Part shown: in pieces, positions 7,501 through 30,742 of the stretch
Position numbering within the stretch: position 1 is the stretch's first letter
Layout of the letters: each line of letters begins with the position of its first letter
Assembly: GCF_036588685.1 (NCBI RefSeq)
Contig: NC_086374.1
Coordinates: forward strand, 29,326,001 to 29,390,000
Direction of reading: 5' to 3'
Origin: Mytilus trossulus
Taxonomy: Eukaryota
Length of the DNA stretch: 64,000 nt
Notes under the pieces: model-generated
What the model was told of the DNA's origin: nothing
The model's database searches: none
What the model saw: only the letters and a program-made list of their open reading frames with translations
Translations under genes and position numbers: made by a program

Positions 7501-10500
7501 CTTTTATGAACAGTAAACTTAAAGAACATGACTGTGAACAATAATTTACTATATCAGTTCAGATGTGCTGACTACTAGGCTTGTGGTAATACCAAAGACA
7601 ATTGGAACACTAGCAGTGATAAGGCATAGGGGTTATAAATTGAATTGAGTAGGATAAATCAAGGACTGATACATGGATGGGGAATATTACAGCATATATT
7701 GATGCATGGTATTGGGAAGGTTTAAGCATGGAATAATACAAAGTAAAAGGAATAGCTACTGATACTTTGCATATGATTCTACATAAAGGCATTGGTTTGC
7801 ATTTAATTCTTATAACAAATCAGTTTCTTAAACAACTGGAATACTTAAAGCTTGAACAGGTCAAAAATGAATATGAATGAGTCCAACAGATGCACAGGGT
7901 CATGCATGGCAGAAAACCAAATTAAAAGAAATCTGGGACTGGCTTAAAACAAAATAACCATTTTACTGATACAAGGGGGAACTTATGACTCTTAGCATTT
8001 TAACAAAGTTTAGGTCGCTTGCAAAATATATTGATTCATTTTTTTAAATTTTGACTTGATATTTTAAATTATCTATTTTAAACAAAATTTATTACAGGAA
8101 GCACCGTTATTAAATGTTAGCAGCTTATCTGCTGAGGTTTGAATGTGATTTCCTAATAATTCCTCCCACTCACTGGAAGGTCAGCACACAACAAGATACC
8201 TTAATACCGGCATCTCTTCTGGCCTCTGCCTCACCAATACGGGCATCTCGCTTAACTTGAGCAGTACGAGCTAATCCAAGTGACTTCAAATATCCCTAAT
8301 GATAAAGGTTAGTGCTTGAGAGAACAGGGTTTATAATAAATAAATGTACAATGTATACCAGCAGCAAGCAGTGACTGCATTCTTTTGTCTGTCGTGTATA
8401 ATATTCCTGAAATAAACGTGATTTATCTACGATAAACTTCACCTTGATTCCAGCATCACGCTTGGCTTCAGCTTCACCAATTCTAGCAGCACTTTTTACT
8501 TCAGCAGTACGCTTCATACCCAAAGCATGTAGATAACCCTGAAATTTGTAATGCATTTACCAATCATTTCTCAAGTAAGATTTGAAAAATAAATTCTGAT
8601 ATGACATCTGTTAACCTGACTATCTGATAGAACCATTTCCTTTCTGATTCAGGTTGGTAAACAATGTCACTTCATGTGTAATACCAAAAAATTTTCTACA
8701 AGCTGTAAACATATAAAATGACAAAAATAATGTTCAAATGAGATTAGATTGAAGTAAACAGCATATGAATAGATCATTGCTTAGTATAACAACAGAAAAC
8801 ACACTGTAATGACTCACCAGTTTCACTGACTGGAATATTTTTTGTATATGACATATGAATAGCATATTTTTTACATTTTGCTCTAGACGAATTCCTTATT
8901 TTGGTACTGCTTTCAGTTTAAAAACAGAAGAATATTTCAATAAATCATGGGTATTGTAGACTTAATCACTTAGGTAATGAACTCATGAAAATTCCCATCT
9001 TTCTACTAATTTTTCTTCATTAATTTTTCTTAGATTTGACGTGGCTAAAATTTATCTAATTTAGGTAAAAATTGATTAAAGAAAGAAAAAATATACAGAA
9101 CATTTATATAATACATGTAGCATGAAAACTTTGAAACAAGTTTCTAAAAACTTTCAAAAAAGTGATTTACTAAATATATTTGCCTACCTCACTATCCCTG
9201 ATATCAGTAATGGTATAACTGACAACAAATATTCCCATGTTCACCAAGTCAGATGATGCCACTTCAAACACAGCCTTCGAAAACTTCTTACGATCCTTGT
9301 AGATTTCCTGATCAAAACATAACAATCATTATATATAGTTTTTGTCCCTTTGTGACATAAAACATCTATTGATAAAGGTTTCTAATGCTAAGCTCAATAT
9401 CAATAGAAATATATATATATATTGCTTGAAACAAGATTTAAATGTTTAATTTTTCCACCATATACATTCTGTACAAATGAACTTTTAGCATTGCATAAGA
9501 TTGTACTAAAAGTATTTTATCGGAACCATCGTTTACTGTTTATTCTTCTATTTAACGTTCCCTCAAATGTTCTTGTACTGAGTTTAGAAGACAGGATTGA
9601 GCCCTTACTAATTAGTTTTAACTGCAACGTATGTTCAAATGCCTGTTTGAAGTCAGAAAACCACACCAAAAAACAATTCAACTAAAGATGACATTAATAG
9701 ATTAACAGAAATGTTGTCTTCAACAACAAATAGACATCTACCGGGGGTACATTATGTCAATGACTGTTGGAAGATTACTTATTTAAATCTCAATTTCCAG
9801 GCTTTTTTCTGAAGAGAACATTTTATTTTTATGATGGCAAATGACACCAAAAATACCAATTTTATAACTACAAACAATGGTCCCGTTAGCCAATCCATTA
9901 TGTATAAGTAAGTCATGACAAAATGGGATGTATTATCATGCTTATAGTTTCAGTTTACTAATTTTACTCAGCCACATGGTAAAGTGCAATTTCAAAGTAA
10001 AAAACTAGTACAATGTATGTATAGTGTACATACTTCAACTGTCATGTTTCCCATGATAGCTCTCTGATGTCCTTCTAGTGTTTCCTGGGCAACATTTCTT
10101 ATCTGTGCTTCTGACTTCCCCAAAAACAGCTCACAAGCAGATGCTAACATGTCCTGGTTGGATCCTTGAATTTTTACCTATAATAAAAGTTTAATAAATA
10201 TAAATGACAATGCTAAGTAGCGTCATCAAATATATACAATACTTTATGTATTATGTTAACAACTCAAACTGAGAAGCTAAATTAGTCTTGAAACAATGAC
10301 ATATCTAGATATTTAAAATTACTTAGTGCTTGATCTAAATTTAGAAGTAAATGTTTAATTATGTTTTTAAAAATCTCAAAATTACAATAAAATTGTCACT
10401 TCATTTTTCAGAAAATATAAAAGGAATTATCATTTAATACTAAGAGAAATATCTTGAAACAAATTTGGAAATATAACTGCTATCTGAAATGTAAGTTGAA

Positions 10501-13500
10501 TGTAAAAAAAATTATATATATATATATAGAATATTATACATTGTTTTCTATTACAAGAAAAATTTAGTTTCATATAACTTCAACTGTTAATCTAATGTGA
10601 ATATATAAATAAATGTATTATTTGTGAACCTTAACTACAGAAAAGTGAAGATCTGCTCTATATTTACACATATTTAAGTCTGAAATAGGAAGTAATTTCA
10701 TATTTGTCAATTTTTAAGAAAATGGTCATCATCATTTTTTAAACCTATTTTCAAGATTCTATGTGTGGTGCTACCCTCAAATTAATTTATCAGAAGACTG
10801 TCTTGAATTTGACCAAAATAGGAGAAGAATTAGGTTTTAGAGAAAATCTCTTATACTGATGTTATACATACATGTACATCAGAAATAACGCAATTGGTGA
10901 AAATCTTTTTTAACTGAAACAATTAGACATCTTAATGTATAGTCTCACAAAACTTTCACAACATTTTTTAAGGTAAAAAATTTCAGTGCCAAAATTTATG
11001 AGTTAGTGAACCCACTACTTTACAATATTAAAATTTGACTTTTAAGGTGAACATGGTGAAGGTCTATTTCAACAACAATTTATACAAAATCTATTAAAAA
11101 AAAAGCAAGTATTATGCACATCTTGATAATGATGCATACATGTATAAGGATTTAACATAAAGGATTACAACCCTAGACAGGCAGAGAAGAATTGGAAAGA
11201 GAGGGTAAGTGCTAGACAGGATTTAAATTTCATAACATTTGTTAAGGTTCGTCATAACCTTTCTGCTTAAAATGGCAGAGAGATAACACCTCTACATTTT
11301 GTTCTAAATACAGCCAAACTTGTACAATTTAAAGTTTTTGGTATTATCTAAATATATGTAAGCTATGTATGCATTTTGTGTTTCAATGTTTCAGGAAGTT
11401 AATCACTTTTATTCTATTACAATTACACTGTGAATGCATTCATGTCAACCTTTAACCTTTAAGCTTGTCTGGCTTGGGCTACAATAAGATAAAAACTCAT
11501 CTGACTTATAATGTATTATTTAATCAAACTGTCCTTACCTGTGCTACGCCTTTGATAGATACAGCAACACCTTGCAGGGTGTACACGTTTGGAGAATCTA
11601 TGTGGAGGGTCATAAGATTAAGGTCAAGCCTGAAAGCAAATCAGTTTCCACCATTTCAACAGAACAGTCATTACATTATACGCTGTAGTGGTCTACCGAC
11701 ATGTATGCTTTCTTATTTATTAACATGAAGACATGTCATGTAGTTTTATTACATTTAACAAAGGGAAGACAACCCTCTACCACAGCTATATGTACATGTT
11801 TAGTGAAGACTGACGTTAATATTCATACTTACGTACATTGCAACAGTGGGTGATGGCAAGAAGTCTAGACTTGCTGATAATTACCTTCTTACTCTAAAAT
11901 CATGTGAACTGGTTTGCTGGGGAAAAACTCATGCAAAGGTGGGAACCACGCTCAAGATAGCGAAAAATGAAAACTAAACACAATATATCAGACTTCACTT
12001 CTTACCTGTGCAATTCCTTTCATATGAACTGCTACTCCTTGTAGTGTATACACATTAGGACTGTCTATCTGGAGAGTCATTAAATTAAGGCTGACTCTGA
12101 AATCACATAGCTCTCAAAATCAACAGAAAACCATGCAAGTTTCAAGTGACTTTTTATGATGTGTTGAAAATTTGCAGCAATATTCATTAAATATAGACAC
12201 ATAACAGACAGAAAAGAAGGTTTTTTTTTTATCAAAATTAAAAAAATATTGCTTTAGGGACTTAAGCAATATTACAAATCTTGAATGACCAAGTTTTAAT
12301 TCCATTTTCCATTCTCAATATTCATGATATCAAAATATTTTCGAAATTTTCAAAGCATCATTATCCCCAGGAAACATTCTATAATTCAACCAAAAACATG
12401 GTTCATCTGCAGGCGAAGGCCATGCACTACATTACCTGGGCAATACCAAGTACTGAAATAGCTACACCATGTTGTGTGTAGACATTTGAGCTCTCTATAT
12501 GGATAGTCATGGTATTCAGCGATAATCTAAAAACAAAGCAGTAATACAGCAAAGCAAGTAGCAACAAAACAAATCATTAAATGTCTACAAAGGATGCAAG
12601 GTTAAGCATGCAAAACTAGAAACACTGAGTAAGTATAGGAGGAAATTGTTGGCAAAGCAATAGTACATAATGCAATGTCTGCCAATATTGACTAGTTTAT
12701 AAAAATGTTAAAAAAACACACACGCTTATTTTAACAAAGACATGCTTAAGAACAAGTTACTGTATTTCTTTTGCTTTACCAACAAGAAAGCATAATGATA
12801 ATAGTATTGGTTAAAACAAGACATGCAAGAAGTGGTAAATTATTTCACTGTTTATGCACTTTGAAGATTTAAGTAAATGTATGTCAATTTGTACAGGGTA
12901 AAAGGTAAATGGACAATTTCTCAGTCTAAGAAATCAAAATTATACTGCTTGGGAAAAGCTCACTGAAGTGTTTGAATGTCCCCCGTATTGGATATATTTA
13001 TCAAACTATTCAAGCCATCAAGGTACCAAGGCAATTACTTAAAGTTGGTTCTAATCTTTAAAACTTTTTAAAAATATCTTACAGAAAATGAAAATGAAGG
13101 CTTCAAGGCAAATGCAATGTGATTTCCTATATAACTAATATTTCAAAGAATTGTACACATGAGAGTGCTAACAATGCAATTTTCCATATAATAATCAATA
13201 TTTCCAAGGACATAACTCATTTAAAAATAATTGATTGGCACTGATTTTATAACCAGTCCTAGACATATCTGATATAATGCTATGATATAAGTTTTAAAAA
13301 AATCTGACAAGAATTTTACATGAGAGAGCAATAACATTCCTATATCTCACAATCAAGATCATTCTTTGCAGCTGACACAGGGAGAAATATTTGTATTTGA
13401 CAGAAAGATTTGATAAAGAGACAATTGCAAAAATATAATATGAAGGGGAAATAACTAAAATCTGACACGACACAAGGAAAAGTAACTGAAAATCAGTAAA

Positions 13501-16500
13501 AATAAAATGACAAAAAATGAGACAAGGAAAAACAACTAAATCAAAATCCATTTATATATTATATTTGCTGCTTATGAATTCAACTGATGTTTACAAATTT
13601 CAATAACCTAAGAATAAAATCTATCAATTTAGTTATAAATATTTATGAACATATACAAAAATCACCTCATAATGCAAACTGAAATAAACTACCACTTCTG
13701 GTTCCCAGAACCAAGCATTTCTGGCTTCTGTAAGTATGTGAAAAATGCAAATGTTAACAAGCCGATGCATTGTCCAATAAAATTAGTTCTAAGATTGTCA
13801 AAGTTGGTTCGCTAATCGATTGTGTGATAAAGTATCATTAAAATCTACTACTTCTTAAATTATAAATATAATAATTTGTAATACTAATTTTCACTTGATA
13901 AGCATCTTGGTCCAAATCTTTGTTATATGTTTTAGTAGTCATGTACATGTACAATGATACAATTTTTGAAAATGCCAACAAATTTGCCAGCCTGCTCAAG
14001 ATAAATTTCAATTGAAATGCATTTTAATAGAATCATCATGACCCTCAAAACTTACTTTATTGGACTTAAAGAGGTAAATTAAAGTGGTAAGTTCCAAAAT
14101 TTTGAATATTGTAAAATGTTCTTTTCTCACCTGTGCAACACCTGTAACTGATATAGCTACACCAAATTGTGTGTACACATTTGGACTTTCAATGTGTAAA
14201 GTCATGGTGTTTAGGGAGAGTCTGAAAATCAAATGCTTCAAAAATTAACAAAATTATGCAAAACAAAATTACCATTGCAAACATAAAATAAAACTAAACT
14301 AAAACAGGATTATGCAAATCTACACATAGATGCATAATTAACCTATAATAGGGAAAACTGAACAAGCAATGCCAATACACAGGTCACCTGTTGAAATCAT
14401 ATATGTGTGTATGATGCTTGGTCTCCCCTTTCAAGTCATGATATTTCAAAATATTAGATGCTGATATAGCTTATATTCAAAAATTTGGTCACGACAAATA
14501 TACCTATCATATTCATTTGAAAATTTCAATTTATATTGTCCATAAAAGCACTTTTGTAGCTAAAATTTAGCGTAAAAAACATTCCAAATGTTTAACATGC
14601 TAAAGGAGTTATCTATTATTTTTAATTCTATCAATATTGTTATTGAATACATTATATCTTTGAAACTGTACATGAGACAACAAAAAATTATGATCATATA
14701 CAATGTAGATATAACTAACTTGATTACAGAAAAAATAAAAAATCATTTTAGAAGGGGGAAATTATTAAGTGTTTACAAAAAGGTAGTTAAAAATATTCTC
14801 TTTCATGAAAGGATTTTTTAATGATGCAAAATAACAGCAATAAAACCAAAATTTGGCGAGGCAATAAAACCAAAATATGACCAGGCAATAAAACCAAAAT
14901 ATGGCCAGGCAATAAAACCAAAATATGACCAGGCAATAAAACCAAAATATGGCCAGGCAAAAACAACAGGAGGCAGCATCCCAACAAAACTCTACATATA
15001 AAAACAAGAAGTTATACATATATATCACAATAAATAGTGACAGTCAGGTAAATTAACTTACTTGAGCCGTGCCCGTAACTGACACTGCCACCCCCTGGGC
15101 AGTGTATACGTGTGGACTCTCAATAGATAATGTCAAAGTGTTCAGATTCATTCTGGTCAGCACAAAAGAGTTAGTAATCAAGTATCATTAGCAAAGTTTA
15201 CTCATTAACTGATTTTAGAAGACATTACTTCTTAGTTACTGCCCAAGATTTTACAAAAAGCTTACGGTAAAAATAAGGAGTTGTGCAAATGACACAAGAG
15301 GACAAGGAAGTAAACAACTATAGGGGAATAGCATGATAAAATGCTTCCACCTAAATAACACCACTTTCCAAACCTCACCTACAAAAATATATTCCAGTGA
15401 TGATATCATGACATGTACAATGTATTCAACCTCTATCTATAGTAAGTGGTGTGACCAACGAAACATTTCACACCTTATTTGATGGAATTAACAAATCTGA
15501 GAGAAATTTAGAAACATTGTTGTTCCTTTTGATATGTTCTTAACATTTGCATACATGTACATACATATATATATATACATTTGTATCTCAGAATCAAAAG
15601 TACAAGATTCTTTTCATATTTGATCTGGACCGACTTTTATCCAATTTCAAATCTTTTTTCAATCCAAAATAGCTGCACAAAATCAAGTCAAGGTAAATTG
15701 TATAAAGTTAATACTAACATTTCATTGGAGCATAAAATCAGGTTCATAATTATTTAACACAAAATATATACGTGTTAAGCTAACATAACATGAATACATG
15801 TAATTCAAACATTGACCTACACTTAGTACTTGTGAGACATCATGGCCAATAACGTTCCGACACAAGATGTTATTGAACATCATACATTTACAATTTCTAT
15901 TTTTTTTAAAATCTGTATTTAATCTGAATCATGTTTGCAATATAATTATACATAGTTAAAAGCATGATGAGGAAGTCTAATGTTTGAAAACATCTCCCTG
16001 AATATGTTGAAATTATGATCAATAATCTGATTATCTTATGTGTTTTGTACTTTATTTGTATAAAATGTATTATATTTACCTCTGTAATTTCTGTATAACT
16101 GGCCATACAAAGCATCGACCACCAGGAACAAATAATGATCTACCATGACAACATCCTACAAAAGACAATAATTTCAATGCTTTATTCACTAAGCATGCTA
16201 AGTTACATTTTGTGTTGGTCAGTGGCTGCCTAACATGAAATTCTCTTTTTTCAGATACCAAAAGATATATACATGTAGTCACATAGTGTTTCTCAATTAG
16301 AAATTTTTAGTCCTGATGTAACAGCAACTTTACATTATCAAAAGTAAACAAACTTCATGAACTTACATGTTTCCTATTTCCTTTCTTATCCTTTATTCTA
16401 AGCTTTAGAAATAACCTTACTGAAAGTTTTTTGGTCATTTTCCAATAGGTACTGTTTAAGTCAGAATTTCTTCTATCATCATGATCATATAGGCCGACTT

Positions 16501-18801
16501 CATTTGGAACCCGAGTTCTGACTTAGAGTTCCATATGAATGGTAAATAATTTTGAAGACCTAGATTACTGGATGTGCAATGCCCTTACTCTAAATACGTT
16601 CAATTACAAATTTGATTGGATTGACTTCATAACAATCATCTGGGATATCAAGTCCATAACAAGAACCTGCAACAACCCAGGGCTCCTCGAGTTACTATTT
16701 GCAGAAAAGGTTTATCCAATCATAACAAGTGTTATATACATGTATAACCATGTCAATCCCATCTACTCTAGTCAGAGGTTGGGTTCCAAATGAAGTCAGC
16801 CTATAACTGCCTTCAACAACTTCAAAAATTATGTCATAGGCGGAAACGGCATGAATTGATTTTATATAAACAAATTAAAAAAATATTAGAAAAATGAAGT
16901 GTATAATAATTATGATGTACCTATCTTCCCTATATTTTTTATAGATGTAATAGGAAACACAAATATTACTTTATTTCAATATTTGGCTTAACAACAGTGA
17001 AGTTCATTTCTAAAGAAAACAATAAAAGCCTTGACTGACCTGCATTTTCTAGCAGAGCTCCAGATAAGAATTCACAAATTGGGGTTTTTACCCACCATTT
17101 TCTTATGTAATTGGGTGATAAAGATTTTCAATTGCATTATCAATTCAAATTCACCCCTCAAGTAAATATCAAATTGGGTTTTTCACCACCAGGCTCCTTA
17201 ATGTATTGGGTTTTTACATCAACACACTATTGAATATTTAGGCAATATCAACCCCGGATGTTTTTCCATCTTAAGTATGTTTCTTTCTTTGAATAATATG
17301 TGCTATAGCTGTTTTATTTTCTTAATTCACTGACGAGCAATTGTAGGTTTAATTTGTGTCCCATTTTTAACCTTCTGTCAGTTTTGTAATTTCTCACAAC
17401 TTATAATGTAAACTGTATATAACGGATATGTGCATTCCCAAGCACTCGTCTCAGATCTTTTTTTCTCTTATATACCTTTATTTAAAAATTCTGAGAGGAG
17501 TACCTGTGTGTGTATTCACTCATTAACCGTAAAACGAAAGAAAAAAAATAGTATATAAACTCTCACTATACTTGAATGTTTTTGTTTTATTCAATTTACA
17601 TAAATCTGGGTTAATTCATCCTTTATTAGAACTTTTGGTTTCCAATTACATATCATTTCATAATTGATTTGGCCTTTCACATTTTCTAACGGCAACTGAT
17701 TCAGTTTTTGACGAAGTCCCGTGTTTATTAGCAAATTATGTTCTCGTTGAGGTACGCAAACACGCCCATGCGTTCGACGGACGCTTCCTAAAAACACTGG
17801 CTGAGTGTTGTTATCATCATATCTTTCCTTCAGCTATGCAAAAGAAGCTGAAAACATGCTTCTATTCAATATTTTTATCGGACATTCACTTTCGTTTTCA
17901 TTCAATGTACAAAATGTATGTTATGATAAATCTCAAGCAATTCGAAAAAAAAATATGACAACATGACGCACGCTAATCGGATAAACGCTGAGAAGATCGA
18001 AATGATTTCAAAACCACGTGTACCTTTTGAGCAAGGGAAAATGCCAACAGGGACCCATTTCAGCTACTTGATATGCAGGAATCTATTTTTAGAACGAAAG
18101 GACATTTCCAATTATAAATATAATAAAAATATTATAGATTACGCAACAAGTGAAAACAGATAAGGGTAAATAACGCAAACGGTAGCCAACAAAAGGGTTG
18201 AGAACTCATGGTTTTGGCATATAATTGGGTTTTCCTTTGAATTAATTGGGTTATTGAACCCTGCAATGGGCAATTGCATTGGGTTTTCTATTTTTTGAAT
18301 TGCATGATCACGCAAATACGCAGCTTATCTGGAGCTCTGTTCTAGGGTCTGACTTCATAATTGCCAAAATTAATTTTGTAAATGAACATTTATGAATAGA
18401 TAAATGTAGGGGTCGAGTACAAAATTAAGTAATAATTTATCTAACACAGTAATAGTCCACTTTTGAACTGAATTTCTGTCCTTTTACCACAGTCACTTGT
18501 TTTTATCCTGTCATGGGAAGGTCGACTATCAATTTTCAAGGGAACATTTTTATTCAATCCACTCATGGTGGGTCTCTAAGCCATTGTGCATCAGTGCAGA
18601 TTATGTAATTAGTACCCACTTATAATAAATGGAAGAATTATTTATCTATAATGGGACACAGAGTTTAAAAGTAGCAACCCGTAAAGATATGTTTCGGCGT
18701 CCATTCGCGGGATATGTATGACTGTAATTATGACCTGATTATAATGCAATCTTACCCGAAACAACCATTACTTCGTTCGGTCCACATGTTTCGAACCCCA
18801 T
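1594..18801 (-). CDS. FLOT1: Flotillin-1 (SPFH/band-7 family), multi-exon, 3' end outside window. Constitutive coding exons: 18801-18756, 16155-16080, 10177-10034, 9307-9188, 3426-3274, 3064-2883, 2129-2084, 1731-1594, plus one exon-3 variant and one exon-6 variant
   Basis: Spliced translation [41 protein letters not shown]/[ex3]/[73 protein letters not shown].../[ex6]/EAIAEEARM.../[14 protein letters not shown].../[46 protein letters not shown]. All introns are GT-AG with compatible phases; 364 codons lie in the window. Confidence 0.96.
2200..2457 (+). repeat. High-copy interspersed repeat; inverted copies at ~19960-20010 and ~20529-20670
   Basis: 'ataaaattgagaatggaaatgg..tgtgtcaaagagacaacaacc..cagctggcccctaaa' matches the reverse complement of the other loci. 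Confidence 0.7.
5122..6380. mobile_element. Non-autonomous Tc1/mariner(pogo)-like element
   Basis: TA|CAGTCGATTCC ... GGAATCTACTG|TA, imperfect TIRs, subterminal 'ttgcata' repeats. Confidence 0.7.
8200..8295 (-). CDS. FLOT1: FLOT1 alternative exon 6b (96 nt): [32 protein letters not shown]
   Basis: cattag acceptor with CTAAC branch point, gtatct donor, phase 0/0, paralogous to 6a. Confidence 0.9.
8443..8538 (-). CDS. FLOT1: FLOT1 alternative exon 6a (96 nt): [32 protein letters not shown]
   Basis: tttcag acceptor, gtgaag donor, phase 0/0; lies within ORF 8296-8556. Confidence 0.9.
11539..11629 (-). CDS. FLOT1: FLOT1 alternative exon 3e (91 nt): (R)[30 protein letters not shown]
   Basis: ctttcag acceptor, gtaagg donor, open frame. 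Confidence 0.9.
12006..12096 (-). CDS. FLOT1: FLOT1 alternative exon 3d (91 nt): (R)[30 protein letters not shown]
   Basis: tttcag acceptor, gtaag donor, open frame. Confidence 0.9.
12436..12526 (-). CDS. FLOT1: FLOT1 alternative exon 3c (91 nt): (R)[30 protein letters not shown]
   Basis: ttttag acceptor, gtaatg donor, open frame. Confidence 0.9.
14131..14221 (-). CDS. FLOT1: FLOT1 alternative exon 3b (91 nt): (R)[30 protein letters not shown]
   Basis: ttttcag acceptor, gtgag donor; lies within ORF 14008-14241. Confidence 0.92.
14835..14960. repeat. 24-bp minisatellite (~5 copies) between FLOT1 exons 3a and 3b
   Basis: ggcaataaaaccaaaatatg(g/a)cca repeated. Confidence 0.9.
15062..15152 (-). 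CDS. FLOT1: FLOT1 alternative exon 3a (91 nt): (R)[30 protein letters not shown]
   Basis: cag acceptor, gtaagt donor, open frame, phase 2/0, TACTAAC branch-point-like motif upstream. Confidence 0.9.
16492..16801. mobile_element. ~310-bp MITE
   Basis: TIR ggccgacttcatttggaaccc / gggttccaaatgaagtcagcc flanked by TA(TA). Confidence 0.8.
17053..18339. mobile_element. 1.29-kb non-autonomous DNA transposon in FLOT1 intron 1
   Basis: Perfect 16-bp TIR CAGAGCTCCAGATAAG and 6-bp TSD TTCTAG (17047-17052, 18340-18345). Confidence 0.88.
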
Positions 18802-23481: not shown

Positions 23482-24066
23482 TTATAAGATGGTACAGCAA
23501 CTATCTGACGTTTGTGATGAGCTGTAGTTATTACGTTGATAACTGGCTGCCGGACGGCTGTAACTCGAATGCCCATAAGTGATAGCGGGACGACTCTGTT
23601 CAGGTTCTTTTATCTTCCGTAACAAAACTGTTATTGGTTCAAGGAAGAAAGTCTGTAGCCATGAAAGTTTATAACACATGATCTTCTTAACTGCTACTCG
23701 AGCTTCGCCCACTACCACGCTTTGAACGGCTGCGACTGTAACATTAGTAGACCTTAAATTGAAAAACTCATTTTGGCTGTCACCACATGCATCAGGATTC
23801 AAAAATATGCATTTTCCTTCCATTATATCGGGTGATAGCTTCAGACAAAGTAGAACAAGAGTTTGTTCATCTACATTTGATAGGTTGTAATATTGCTGAT
23901 AATAAGTGAGTCGGGTTAAGTCATATCCTTTGTTTTCCAAATTTAGAACAACGCACATACAATTCAGATAGTACATCAGTTTAGCCCTTGGGTCGTTTGG
24001 AACAGTAACGGTTACACCAGTTGTCTCAACACCAACTCGATTGTTACGGAGAACTACCGCTGCCAT
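23482..24066 (-). CDS. Uncharacterised 194-aa single-exon protein, paralogue 1, C-terminal CCTIL (CaaX)
   Basis: Clean ORF with gcaATGG start; aligns along ~150 aa with ORFs 29317-29928 and 32654-33118. Confidence 0.88.
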   Translation of the reverse strand: MAAVVLRNNRVGVETTGVTVTVPNDPRAKLMYYLNCMCVVLNLENKGYDLTRLTYYQQYYNLSNVDEQTLVLLCLKLSPDIMEGKCIFLNPDACGDSQNEFFNLRSTNVTVAAVQSVVVGEARVAVKKIMCYKLSWLQTFFLEPITVLLRKIKEPEQSRPAITYGHSSYSRPAASYQRNNYSSSQTSDSCCTIL

Positions 24067-24159
24067 TGCACAGAAGCAGTGAAAGAGAGGTATAATTTAA
24101 AAACTTAAATATGACACAATATATTTACTCTTAGTGAAAAAAGAAAGAAATCCCGAGAC

Positions 24160-29316: not shown

Positions 29317-29928
29317 TTACAAAATAACACAACAGTCCAAAGATTCCGATGTAGATGTATAATACCAGTTAACATTGTTTCTTGTTGTGTTCCTGTGTAT
29401 TTGTGGTGTAGCTGACCTTGTAGTAATTGCTGGCCTGTTCCTATACGTAATTGATTGTTGATTTCTTGTAGGAGTAATACCAAGAACGTTGCTAATCGGA
29501 TGTATATAATTTCTCCTCATCCATGACATGGAATAGACCATTATCTTCTTCACAGTTACTTCAACTGCTCCGACAAACACATTTTCTGCAGCAGCAAATG
29601 AAATCTCCGAACTGTTTAAGGTAAAAAATCGGTTTCCAACGTCCTGGCAAAGCTCTTCAGAATTGAAGATACACTTGCCGACCATCTTGTCGGGAGATAA
29701 ATAGCCACACAGTACAATAAGTATTACTTTCTCGTCTTCTGTCAACATATAGTAATTTTTGTAATCACTTAATCTTTCAATATTGAAATCCGTATCTTCC
29801 AATCCTAAAACATTACACAATACACTCAAATAATACATGAGTTTTGCTGTATCATTGTCTAAGACATCAACAATAGAACCAGTTTCTGTTATTCCTATTT
29901 CTCTACGATTTAACACTACTGTCGCCAT
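29317..29928 (-). CDS. Uncharacterised 203-aa single-exon protein, paralogue 2, C-terminal CCVIL (CaaX)
   Basis: Clean ORF with shared motifs AKLMYYL..LC.VL, LSPD.M.GKCIF, V.VKKIM.Y..SW. Confidence 0.88.
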   Translation of the reverse strand: MATVVLNRREIGITETGSIVDVLDNDTAKLMYYLSVLCNVLGLEDTDFNIERLSDYKNYYMLTEDEKVILIVLCGYLSPDKMVGKCIFNSEELCQDVGNRFFTLNSSEISFAAAENVFVGAVEVTVKKIMVYSMSWMRRNYIHPISNVLGITPTRNQQSITYRNRPAITTRSATPQIHRNTTRNNVNWYYTSTSESLDCCVIL

Positions 29929-30742
29929 ATTTTACATTAAGTGGTAAATTACATTATAGGATTTTAAATGCAGATCTATTTTTACATAAGTAAGTCCTTG
30001 GTACAATAATTCGGTACATTGTTTTAATATATGTTATAAAATAATAAAAGATTTTTTATGGATCGAACAAAAATCCTCAATGTTTTCAGTCGATTTATTG
30101 GATTCATGTAGACGCACATTCCTTGTACATGTATGGTAAAATACTTTAAATGAAGGGCCATTATTGAAATAACGTATTACACCAGTCAATTCATTGGTTT
30201 CAAAAAGCAAGCTGTATGTTTTATAGGGGTTCTCTGTTTCTATCTATAGCATTCGATCTGCATTATTATATCAAATTTTAGAAAGGGTCATCAGTGTATA
30301 TCTAAGACCCTGTTGCAAATAATAAGCGATTTACATGTATCAGTCATTCTCCTTTTTTAGTCCTATATGTTCTATTGTGGAATGACATAACCCATTCGAT
30401 AAAAGTCTTTTCAACAAAAAGCTTTTTACATTTTTCTGAATATGTTTTAGCTTAAAACAAGATTTCAGACCGACTAAAGTTTCGATCAAATCAACGCAAC
30501 TTGATAGCCCTGTTGAAAATTGAATCAGAAGTTCGAGGACACAGATTTTAGAAAGTCAAAATTTCAAGTTAGAGTAAAAATTTCGGGATTTGACAAATCA
30601 AAATTTCAAGTTGTAGTCAAAATTTCGAGATTTGAAATGTCAAAATTTCGACTTTGAAAAAAAAGTTCACTGCCAATTTGTTTTTTCTATGTCCCTAATA
30701 CGCTTCCGTAGAATACAGTCCCAAGTGCAAACAGTGTAAAAC

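What the first reader, a model, noticed from the sequence alone, without database searches (positions are those of the whole stretch)
11539..15152. Five tandem, mutually exclusive-type versions of flotillin-1 exon 3
Seen: five paralogous exons of exactly 91 nt, each with intact AG/GT sites, the same phase (2/0) and no stops. Nucleotides are diverged but the peptide pattern is conserved (L.LN.MT..I.S.NVYT..GVA....G.AQ). They group as 3b/3c, 3d/3e and an outlier 3a; 3d/3e place Lys at the V-T-G position. Because 91 is not a multiple of 3, skipping or double inclusion frameshifts, which would enforce exclusivity via NMD. Known: flotillins oligomerise on membranes through the SPFH domain, and this exon encodes residues ~41-71 of it. 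Inference: a small Dscam-like cassette diversifying a raft scaffold; with the exon-6 pair this gives up to 10 isoforms. I recall a two-way exon switch in vertebrate FLOT2 (verify), but know of no five-way array in FLOT1.
Basis: partly seen in the sequence, partly recalled or inferred. Interest (0 to 1): 0.88.

Follow-up and report, generated by a model that had tools for sequence, protein, structure and literature searches.

The report
Five alternative exons in mussel flotillin-1
The bay mussel's single flotillin-1 gene carries five diverged tandem copies of one 91-base exon, used one at a time to swap two strands of the membrane-inserted domain; this is a real but ordinary kind of alternative splicing, partly present already in public gene annotation.

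Summary
On the minus strand there are exactly five 91-nt paralogous exons (15152-15062, 14221-14131, 12526-12436, 12096-12006, 11629-11539). All have AG/GT sites, the same phase and an open frame, and all encode flotillin-1 residues 42-71.

Synonymous sites between copies are saturated (pS 0.59-1.09), while replacement differences stay low (pN 0.12-0.29). All five have therefore been held as coding sequence.

- **Use of 3b:** spliced RNA contigs join exon 2 to 3b to exon 4 in three runs.
- **Use of 3e:** one run joins 3e to exon 4.
- **RefSeq isoforms, all 427 aa:** 3b or 3e in M. trossulus, 3c in M. californianus, 3e in M. galloprovincialis.
- **3a and 3d:** no productive transcript was found. 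3d appears only in frame-breaking 3b-3d and 3d-3e joints.

Skipping or any double inclusion gives a premature stop. Scans for Dscam-like docking/selector pairing did not exceed shuffled controls.

Same-length exon-3 isoforms also exist in abalone (4 variants), Lingula (3), a unionid and a land snail, so the cassette is old and widespread in Lophotrochozoa. Human FLOT2 is a published two-way case. I found no paper describing the flotillin-1 array.

Verdict: a new member of a known kind, of moderate interest.

The parts
18756..18801 (-). Exon 1 coding part (ATG at 18801; [16 protein letters not shown])
   Evidence: tblastn of RefSeq M. trossulus flotillin-1-like X1 (P0192), residues 1-16 at 100% identity
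16080..16155 (-). Constitutive exon 2 (76 nt). It ends with AG, the first two bases of the Arg41 codon
   Evidence: Sequence and splice sites. RNA joint 16080 to 14221 in three runs
15062..15152 (-). Exon 3a ([30 protein letters not shown]), first in the array and of the 'M-type'
   Evidence: Open frame and AG/GTAAGT sites. Groups with the abalone X1 exon, support 97/75. Identical peptide in M. edulis models. No spliced joint seen
14131..14221 (-). Exon 3b ([30 protein letters not shown]), the main form in three of the four runs laid
   Evidence: Joints exon 2 to 3b and 3b to exon 4 in runs X1, X4 and X5. Present in RefSeq X1/X2 of M. trossulus and X1/X3 of M. californianus
12436..12526 (-). 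Exon 3c ([30 protein letters not shown]), with Leu at the V-T-G position
   Evidence: Intact sites. Its orthologue (28/30 identical) is the exon 3 of M. californianus RefSeq isoform X2. No joint in the four runs
12006..12096 (-). Exon 3d ([30 protein letters not shown]), the most diverged copy, with Lys at V-T-G
   Evidence: Intact sites. Seen only in joints 3b to 3d (X1, contig depth 6) and 3d to 3e (X2). pN 0.16 against pS 0.70 versus 3e
11539..11629 (-). Exon 3e ([30 protein letters not shown]), with Lys at V-T-G
   Evidence: Joint 3e to exon 4 in run X2. Present in RefSeq X3 of M. trossulus, X3 of M. galloprovincialis and X4 of M. californianus
10034..10177 (-). Constitutive exon 4 (144 nt; VKIQGSNQ...MTVE), the common acceptor for all exon-3 variants
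   Evidence: tblastn at 100% identity. Joints from 3b and 3e
8443..8538 (-). Exon 6a ([32 protein letters not shown]), 96 nt, one of the second alternative pair
   Evidence: Sequence. Used in RefSeq X2 of M. trossulus and X3/X4 of M. californianus
8200..8295 (-). Exon 6b ([32 protein letters not shown]), 96 nt, the partner of 6a
   Evidence: tblastn at 100% identity to X1 residues 160-191

Best explanation
This is a genuine cluster of tandemly duplicated, mutually exclusive-type exons in the only flotillin-1 gene of the bay mussel. Exon 2 is spliced to one of five 91-nt versions of exon 3, and that version is spliced to exon 4. Each version encodes residues 42-71: the end of strand 3, strand 4, the 58-62 loop and most of strand 5 of the five-stranded SPFH1 domain. 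SPFH1 is the part of the flotillin cage that sits in the membrane leaflet and touches the neighbouring flotillin-2 SPFH1.

3b is the common form. 3e and 3c are alternative forms. 3a, an old 'M-type' exon shared with gastropods and a chiton, and 3d are kept as coding sequence and are probably used in conditions or tissues not sampled here.

Exclusivity is enforced at least by the reading frame. Skipping, or including two copies, gives an early stop codon, so such transcripts should be removed by nonsense-mediated decay. The primary choice is probably set by splicing factors, not by a docking/selector RNA structure.

Shown: the anatomy, the long-term coding constraint, the use of 3b, 3c and 3e, leaky double inclusion, and the premature stops. 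Inferred: decay of the frame-broken transcripts, productive use of 3a and 3d, and any functional difference between isoforms.

The confidence of 0.8 is for a real one-at-a-time cluster with at least three used members. That all five are used productively I put at about 0.55.
For: - **Anatomy:** five exons with identical length, phase and splice sites, and no sixth copy.
- **Coding constraint:** pS 0.59-1.09 against pN 0.12-0.29, with differences mostly at third codon positions. None of the 52 listed differences between the window and contigs of four runs falls in the 455 exonic bases; about 4 would be expected if they were spread evenly.
- **RNA joints:** exact CT..AC joints 16080/14221 and 14131/10177 in X1, X4 and X5, and 11539/10177 in X2.
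- **Annotated isoforms:** RefSeq isoforms of equal length (427 aa) differ only in exon 3 (3b, 3c or 3e) and exon 6.
- **Wider distribution:** same-position, same-length variants occur in Haliotis (4), Lingula (3), Sinanodonta (2) and Bradybaena (2).
- **Age of 3a:** 3a groups with the Haliotis M-type exon, support 97/75.
- **Frame enforcement:** a premature stop follows every skip or double inclusion. Double-inclusion joints 3b to 3d and 3d to 3e exist.
- **Structure:** the AF2 model places the exon on strands 46-57 and 63-74 of SPFH1. Published cage structures say SPFH1 is half embedded in the membrane and contacts flotillin-2 SPFH1 through its loops (PMC13000311; PMC11260169).
Against: - No transcript or database protein joins exon 2 to 3a or 3d and on to exon 4. 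Only four runs, kept as contigs, could be laid.
- 3c use rests on a RefSeq model in a sister species, not on reads seen here.
- In run X2 the contig carrying 3e to exon 4 continues upstream into 30 nt of 3d, not into exon 2. I cannot fully explain this. The 30 nt is k-1 for 31-mers, which would fit a contig ending at a graph branch if these contigs are built with the same 31-letter words as the run index (my inference). Depth arithmetic shows no deep contig over the rest of 3d.
- Nonsense-mediated decay was not tested.
- Orthologous genomic loci could not be fetched, so per-exon constraint between species is untested.
Confidence: 0.8

Rival explanations
1. Only 3b, 3c and 3e are productive alternatives. 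3a and/or 3d are either relics no longer used, or 'poison' exons whose inclusion beside another copy breaks the frame and lowers flotillin-1 output (regulated unproductive splicing).
For: - The only 3d joints seen are 3b to 3d and 3d to 3e, and both give premature stops.
- No database protein has exon 2-3a-exon 4 or exon 2-3d-exon 4.
- 3d is the most diverged copy, changing S-V-T to H-M-K, and has the long branch (0.43 against 0 for 3e) in the peptide tree.
Against: - Synonymous sites between 3d and 3e are saturated (pS 0.70) while pN is 0.16. A copy drifting freely since the duplication would not keep this, nor the exact 91 nt, the open frame and both splice sites.
- 3a groups with an exon that is used in annotated isoforms of abalone, a land snail and a chiton.
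- A poison exon needs no conserved protein sequence.
- Sampling was four contig-only runs.
Confidence: 0.25
2. Exon choice is made by a Dscam-type competing RNA structure: one docking site in intron 2 or in the last intron pairs with a selector next to each variant.
For: The layout (a tandem array between two constitutive exons, with introns of 339-1604 nt) is the kind in which such structures are known. One strong pairing flanks 3e (11646-11675 with about 11239-11283; -26.3 kcal/mol for the scanned 30-nt window, -28.1 for the extended duplex; about 0.001 per window).
Against: - The best 'pairs with all four inner introns' score (-17.8 and -18.0 kcal/mol) lies inside the range of shuffled docking introns (-16.6 to -18.5).
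- The inverted repeats found are A+T-rich and 70-90% complementary, with no hub.
- No 7-9-mer is shared by four of the five flanks, and no intron-2 or last-intron 8-9-mer has its complement in three or more of the five exon flanks on the side a selector would occupy; the single 8-mer that does (TTAACAAA, last intron against upstream flanks) is A+T-rich.
- The 3e pairing is about what is expected once in roughly 900 tests.
Confidence: 0.08
3. The array is an assembly or duplication artefact and not a feature of the gene.
For: None found.
Against: - The copies differ at 24-47% of bases.
- Contigs from independent runs and at least two organisms cover the exons and introns colinearly.
- Three Mytilus RefSeq annotations use different copies.
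Confidence: 0.01

Closest known systems
Human FLOT2 tandem duplicated exon substitution (Martinez-Gomez et al. 2022, PMC9741552, Table S2)
   Same: It is in the same protein family. The alternative exons are homologous, made by tandem exon duplication and used one at a time. The event is old (listed as at least Chordata), peptide-supported and tissue-specific (nervous).
   Different: It is a two-way switch in flotillin-2. I could not establish which exon is involved. The mussel case is a five-copy array in flotillin-1. The mussel's three flotillin-2-like loci have residues 41-116 in a single exon and no array.
RefSeq-modelled flotillin-1 isoform sets of other lophotrochozoans (Haliotis rufescens X1-X6, Lingula anatina X1-X6, Sinanodonta, Bradybaena)
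   Same: The same 30-residue segment is swapped in proteins of equal length. Haliotis also has the same exon-6 pair, with the 'MKRTAEVK' and 'MARTAQVK' types.
   Different: They show fewer variants: 4 in Haliotis, 3 in Lingula and 2 in the others. The Lys/Leu/Met replacements of the near-invariant Thr are seen here only in mytilids and in one nemertean isoform. Lingula also alternates exon 2. Oyster isoforms keep one exon 3 and vary by a micro-insertion before exon 6.
Dscam1 exon 4/6/9 clusters and other arthropod mutually exclusive exon clusters (14-3-3zeta, Mhc, MRP)
   Same: A tandem array of paralogous exons lies between constitutive exons, with one chosen per transcript.
   Different: No docking/selector pairing or shared selector motif was detected. 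The array is tiny (5 copies). Here frame-shift plus surveillance is sufficient in principle for exclusivity, because 91 is not a multiple of 3.

Membership tests
Flotillin-1 (SPFH/Band 7 family) | Band 7/SPFH domain plus the flotillin C-terminal domain | tested here: met
   RefSeq M. trossulus flotillin-1-like X1 (P0192) carries precomputed PF01145 and PF15975. It matches window exons 1, 4 and 6b at 100% and the other matched exons at 95-98%, the mismatches being where alignments run past exon ends.
Flotillin-1 (SPFH/Band 7 family) | Closer to flotillin-1 than to flotillin-2 | tested here: met
   The exon 3a peptide hits human flotillin-1 chains (9bq2_B, 9l3g_A) at E 4.5e-5, against 0.15-0.76 for flotillin-2. 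The three other flotillin-like loci in the genome are only 44-55% identical to P0192.
Mutually exclusive exon cluster from tandem exon duplication | Adjacent homologous exons of equal length and phase, each with its own splice sites | tested here: met
   Five exons of 91 nt, phase 2/0, with AG and GT at every copy.
Mutually exclusive exon cluster from tandem exon duplication | Mature transcripts carry exactly one member | tested here: inconclusive
   Met for 3b (exon 2-3b-exon 4 in one contig, three runs) and for 3e to exon 4. Met in 427-aa RefSeq isoforms for 3b, 3c and 3e. Not seen for 3a or 3d. Double-inclusion joints 3b-3d and 3d-3e also exist.
Mutually exclusive exon cluster from tandem exon duplication | All members under purifying selection as coding sequence | tested here: met
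   pS 0.59-1.09 against pN 0.12-0.29 in all ten pairs, with a third-position excess of differences.
Frame-enforced exclusivity (nonsense-mediated decay type) | Skipping or joint inclusion creates a premature stop upstream of later exon junctions | tested here: met
   Skipping gives a stop immediately after Arg41. All ten ordered double inclusions stop within the second copy or, when 3c is second, in exon 4. Decay itself is not testable with these tools.
Dscam-type docking/selector system | One docking sequence complementary to a selector beside each variant | tested here: not met
   Duplex scan scores equal those of shuffled controls. No shared flank motif or complementary k-mers. Conservation across species was not testable.

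The most novel reading that the evidence does not exclude
The exon-3 variants, with the exon-6 pair, give up to ten flotillin-1 isoforms that build functionally distinct cages. Swapping two of the five SPFH1 strands includes putting Lys, Leu or Met in place of a Thr that is nearly invariant across animal flotillin-1. This would change how deeply, or on which lipids, the cage rim sits, or which of the three flotillin-2 paralogues it pairs with. The result would be a combinatorial code for membrane microdomains, conserved and repeatedly expanded in Lophotrochozoa.
Probability: 0.15. Interest if true: 0.75.

Novelty: new member of a known kind. Interest (0 to 1): 0.45.

Why it matters
Flotillin cages were solved only in 2024-2026. 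Those structures show that SPFH1 is the membrane-embedded rim and a contact between flotillin-1 and flotillin-2. A natural cassette that swaps two of the five SPFH1 strands is a ready-made set of variants for asking what that rim does: lipid preference, insertion depth and partner choice. This cassette has been kept for hundreds of millions of years in molluscs and is paralleled in brachiopods.

It also adds a clean example, outside arthropods, of a multi-copy mutually exclusive cluster whose exclusivity can be explained by reading frame alone. In addition, it corrects the public annotation, which models only 3b and 3e for this species.

Tried and rejected
- **Orthologous loci:** There was therefore no intron conservation analysis and no between-species dN/dS.
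- **Expressed fragments:** a search for short expressed fragments carrying a 3x-exon 4 junction, using exon 4 as the query, returned only genomic single-exon reading frames.
- **Representative-library search:** the search with exon 4 gave mostly single-exon fragments. It served only to reach a full-length flotillin, P0020.
- **Docking/selector structure:** the inverted-repeat search, the sliding RNA duplex scan with shuffled controls and the k-mer sharing and complementarity tests were all negative.
- **Steric and spliceosome explanations:** steric hindrance is rejected from the sequence because the inner introns are 339-1604 nt. U2/U12 incompatibility is rejected because all donors are ordinary GT-AG.
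- **In-frame mini-exon in run X2:** I considered that the 30 nt of 3d ahead of 3e might be an in-frame mini-exon. By my reading of the 3d sequence, the internal AGs would give 23, 26, 29 or 32 nt, none of which restores the frame, so I rejected this.
- **Literature:** searches found no description of flotillin-1 alternative exon arrays.
- **Joined models:** Exons were searched by reference, and database proteins were used for full-length work. Joined exons were translated only inside a local script, to read the frames.
Full report
**What is there**

The window is from the bay mussel. An earlier scan note said so. RefSeq Mytilus trossulus flotillin-1-like isoform X1 matches window exons 1, 4 and 6b at 100% and the other matched exons at 95-98%, the mismatches lying where alignments run past exon ends.

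The gene lies on the minus strand:

| Exon | Coordinates |
|---|---|
| Exon 1 (ATG at 18801) | 18801-18756 |
| Exon 2 | 16155-16080 |
| Five versions of exon 3 | see below |
| Exon 4 | 10177-10034 |
| Exon 5 | 9307-9188 |
| Exon 6a / 6b (alternative pair) | 8538-8443 / 8295-8200 |
| Further exons | down to about 1591 |

The last exon lies just outside the window.

| Copy | Coordinates |
|---|---|
| 3a | 15152-15062 |
| 3b | 14221-14131 |
| 3c | 12526-12436 |
| 3d | 12096-12006 |
| 3e | 11629-11539 |

Each has a pyrimidine-rich acceptor and a consensus-like donor. Each first base completes the same Arg41 codon: AG+A in four copies and AG+G in 3e. There is no sixth copy nearby. The genome has one flotillin-1 gene. 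phmmer against solved structures aligns the peptide to human flotillin-1 residues 42-70.

**Are all five real coding exons?**

Copies are 53-76% identical in DNA but 60-83% identical in protein. By Nei-Gojobori counting, synonymous sites are saturated (pS 0.59-1.09) while pN is 0.12-0.29. Differences pile up at third codon positions, for example 6/3/17 for 3d-3e and 6/2/14 for 3b-3c.

A copy that had drifted since these old duplications would not keep the exact length, the frame, both splice sites and the conserved residues (N45, T48, S53, Y57, G61, G68, A70, Q71).

A weaker sign points the same way. None of the 52 listed substitutions and indels between the window and contigs of four runs falls in the 455 exonic bases, where about 4 would be expected. 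Some rows were not shown, so this is only suggestive.

**Which copies are used?**

I laid contigs of four public runs, from three studies and two coded organisms, on 10140-16120. The runs are labelled only as guessed RNA. However, exact CT..AC joints at exon borders show that spliced RNA is present.

- **X1, X4 and X5:** one contig joins exon 2 to 3b (16080/14221) and 3b to exon 4 (14131/10177).
- **X2:** 3e is joined to exon 4 (11539/10177).
- **Frame-breaking joints:** 3b to 3d occurs in X1, in a contig of depth 6 that also retains the 3d-3e intron. 3d to 3e occurs in X2.
- **3a and 3c:** no spliced joint was seen. Both are covered only by colinear unspliced contigs.

Public proteins fill part of the gap. 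All of the following are 427 aa:

| Species | Isoform | Exons used |
|---|---|---|
| M. trossulus | X1 | 3b+6b |
| M. trossulus | X2 | 3b+6a |
| M. trossulus | X3 | 3e+6b |
| M. californianus | X1 | 3b+6b |
| M. californianus | X2 | 3c+6b |
| M. californianus | X3 | 3b+6a |
| M. californianus | X4 | 3e+6a |
| M. galloprovincialis | X3 | 3e+6b |

No protein in the 5.8-billion collection joins exon 2 to 3a or 3d and on to exon 4. That collection holds only two Logan-derived full-length Mytilus proteins, so its power is low.

**An unexplained detail**

Thirty is k-1 for 31-mers, which would fit a contig ending at a graph branch if these contigs are built with the same 31-letter words as the run index (my inference). 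Consistent with that, the other branch, unspliced intron plus 29 nt of 3d, is a separate contig.

The bin depth over 3d (107) is fully accounted for by those 30 nt plus two shallow unspliced contigs. There is therefore no deep contig over the rest of 3d. I conclude that the 3d-3e joint exists but its abundance cannot be read from these data.

**How exclusivity can work**

- Skipping all copies puts a stop directly after Arg41.
- A second copy is read out of frame and stops after 2 codons (3e), 4 codons (3d) or 11 codons (3b).
- When 3c is the second copy, the stop comes 15 codons into exon 4.

Every such transcript therefore carries an early stop far upstream of later junctions, which is the standard substrate for nonsense-mediated decay. 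This last step is established knowledge and was not tested here. The observed double-inclusion joints show that exon choice is leaky, which fits policing by frame.

Other known mechanisms do not fit:

- **Steric hindrance:** the inner introns are 339-1604 nt, too long for it.
- **Spliceosome type:** all sites are ordinary GT-AG.
- **Docking/selector structure:** the best window pairing with all four inner introns scores -17.8 or -18.0 kcal/mol, while shuffled docking introns give -16.6 to -18.5. Inverted repeats are A+T-rich with no hub. No k-mer is shared by four of the five flanks, and no intron-2 or last-intron 8-9-mer has its complement in three or more of the five exon flanks on the side a selector would occupy; the only 8-mer that does (TTAACAAA, last intron against upstream flanks) is A+T-rich.
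- **Pairing around 3e:** one pairing that brackets 3e (11646-11675 with about 11239-11283) gives -26.3 kcal/mol for the scanned window. It is at about the once-in-900-tests level and remains only a lead.

**What the exon encodes**

An AlphaFold2 model of isoform X1 (mean pLDDT 73, and 79-83 over this part) has strands at 2-16, 23-32, 37-43, 46-57 and 63-74. Exon 3 therefore supplies the end of strand 3, all of strand 4, the 58-62 loop and most of strand 5. That is two of the five strands of SPFH1.

The published human cages report three relevant points. SPFH1 domains penetrate one leaflet. About half of each is embedded. Flotillin-1 and flotillin-2 SPFH1 domains touch through the less conserved loops of this five-stranded core (PMC11260169; PMC13000311).

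Variable positions lie on both strands and in the loop. The most striking is residue 67. It is Thr in at least 90% of 50 aligned animal flotillin-1 sequences, but Leu in 3c and Lys in 3d and 3e. It is Met in another mytilid-like sequence and Leu in one nemertean isoform. That the variants alter membrane seating or partner contacts is inference.

**Distribution and age**

Equal-length isoforms that differ in exactly this segment are modelled in several other species:

- Haliotis rufescens and H. cracherodii, with four versions, plus the same 6a/6b-type pair.
- Lingula anatina, with three versions, plus two versions of exon 2.
- Sinanodonta woodiana, with two versions.
- Bradybaena similaris, with two versions.

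Oyster isoforms keep one exon 3.

A tree of the 30-residue peptides is poorly resolved but supports three groupings:

- 3d with 3e, plus the mytilid-like sequence: 98/86.
- 3c of the two Mytilus species: 97/85.
- 3a with the abalone 'M-type' exon: 97/75. This lies near the chiton and land-snail M-type exons.

The 3a versus 3b split therefore probably predates the bivalve-gastropod divergence, while 3c, 3d and 3e are later mytilid additions.

**Comparison with what is known**

Human FLOT2 is listed among tandem duplicated exon substitution events, with age at least Chordata, peptide support and nervous-tissue bias (PMC9741552 Table S2). Flo1 and Flo2 do not appear in the alphabetical range of that paper's Drosophila list that I read.

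Full-text searches found no paper on flotillin-1 exon arrays in any animal.

The feature is therefore a new member of a well-known kind. It is partly captured by automatic annotation: this species' RefSeq set has 3b and 3e only.

**Limits**

- Only one read-laying run was allowed, on contigs and not on raw reads, so abundances and absences cannot be read.

Noticed in passing
window 14837-14960: A tandem repeat of a 24-nt unit (GCAATAAAACCAAAATATGGCCAG), 5.2 copies at 94% match, lies in the intron between 3a and 3b.
   Followed up: partly
window 13146-13315: A unit of about 165-185 nt from a satellite-like repeat lies in the 3b-3c intron. The genome has at least 98 matches at 68-85% identity, many in head-to-tail arrays on contigs C22, C62, C5, C9 and C10. 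It explains the 'goes back' joints and the raised depth there in all four runs.
   Followed up: partly
proteins P0271-P0273 (M. edulis, non-RefSeq models): These gene models start at the Met of exon 3a and run into 3b through 14 nt of intron (peptide HLIFR), which keeps the frame. P0273 also contains both 6a and 6b. They are probably annotation artefacts, but they show that the 3a peptide is identical in M. edulis.
   Followed up: partly
G000 C8:16288054-16292006, C14:39588535-39600338, C26:237712-261162: There are three flotillin-2-like loci (44-55% identity to flotillin-1). In each, residues 41-116 lie in one exon, so there is no exon-3 array in the partner genes. I did not check whether C14 and C26 are true paralogues or duplicate haplotypes.
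   Followed up: no
window 8200-8538: The exon 6a/6b pair (96 nt each, so not frame-enforced) spans the GYL motif that holds the Fyn-target tyrosine of human flotillin-1 (Y160). The same two types ('MKRTAEVK' and 'ARTAQVK') alternate in Haliotis, Littorina and Bradybaena isoforms.
   Followed up: partly
window 11646-11675 and 11239-11283: A possible RNA pairing brackets exon 3e, with one arm 16 nt upstream of its acceptor: -26.3 kcal/mol for the scanned window and -28.1 for the extended duplex. The chance level is about 0.001 per window, which is not significant after about 900 tests.
   Followed up: partly
proteins P0285-P0296 (oysters); P0171-P0206 (Lingula): Oyster flotillin-1 isoforms differ by insertions of about 4-16 residues between exons 5 and 6, not by exon 3. 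Lingula also alternates two versions of exon 2.
   Followed up: no
window 23485-24096 and 29320-29931, minus strand: Two intronless paralogous reading frames of 204 aa end in CC-x-IL. The scan has already noted them.
   Followed up: no
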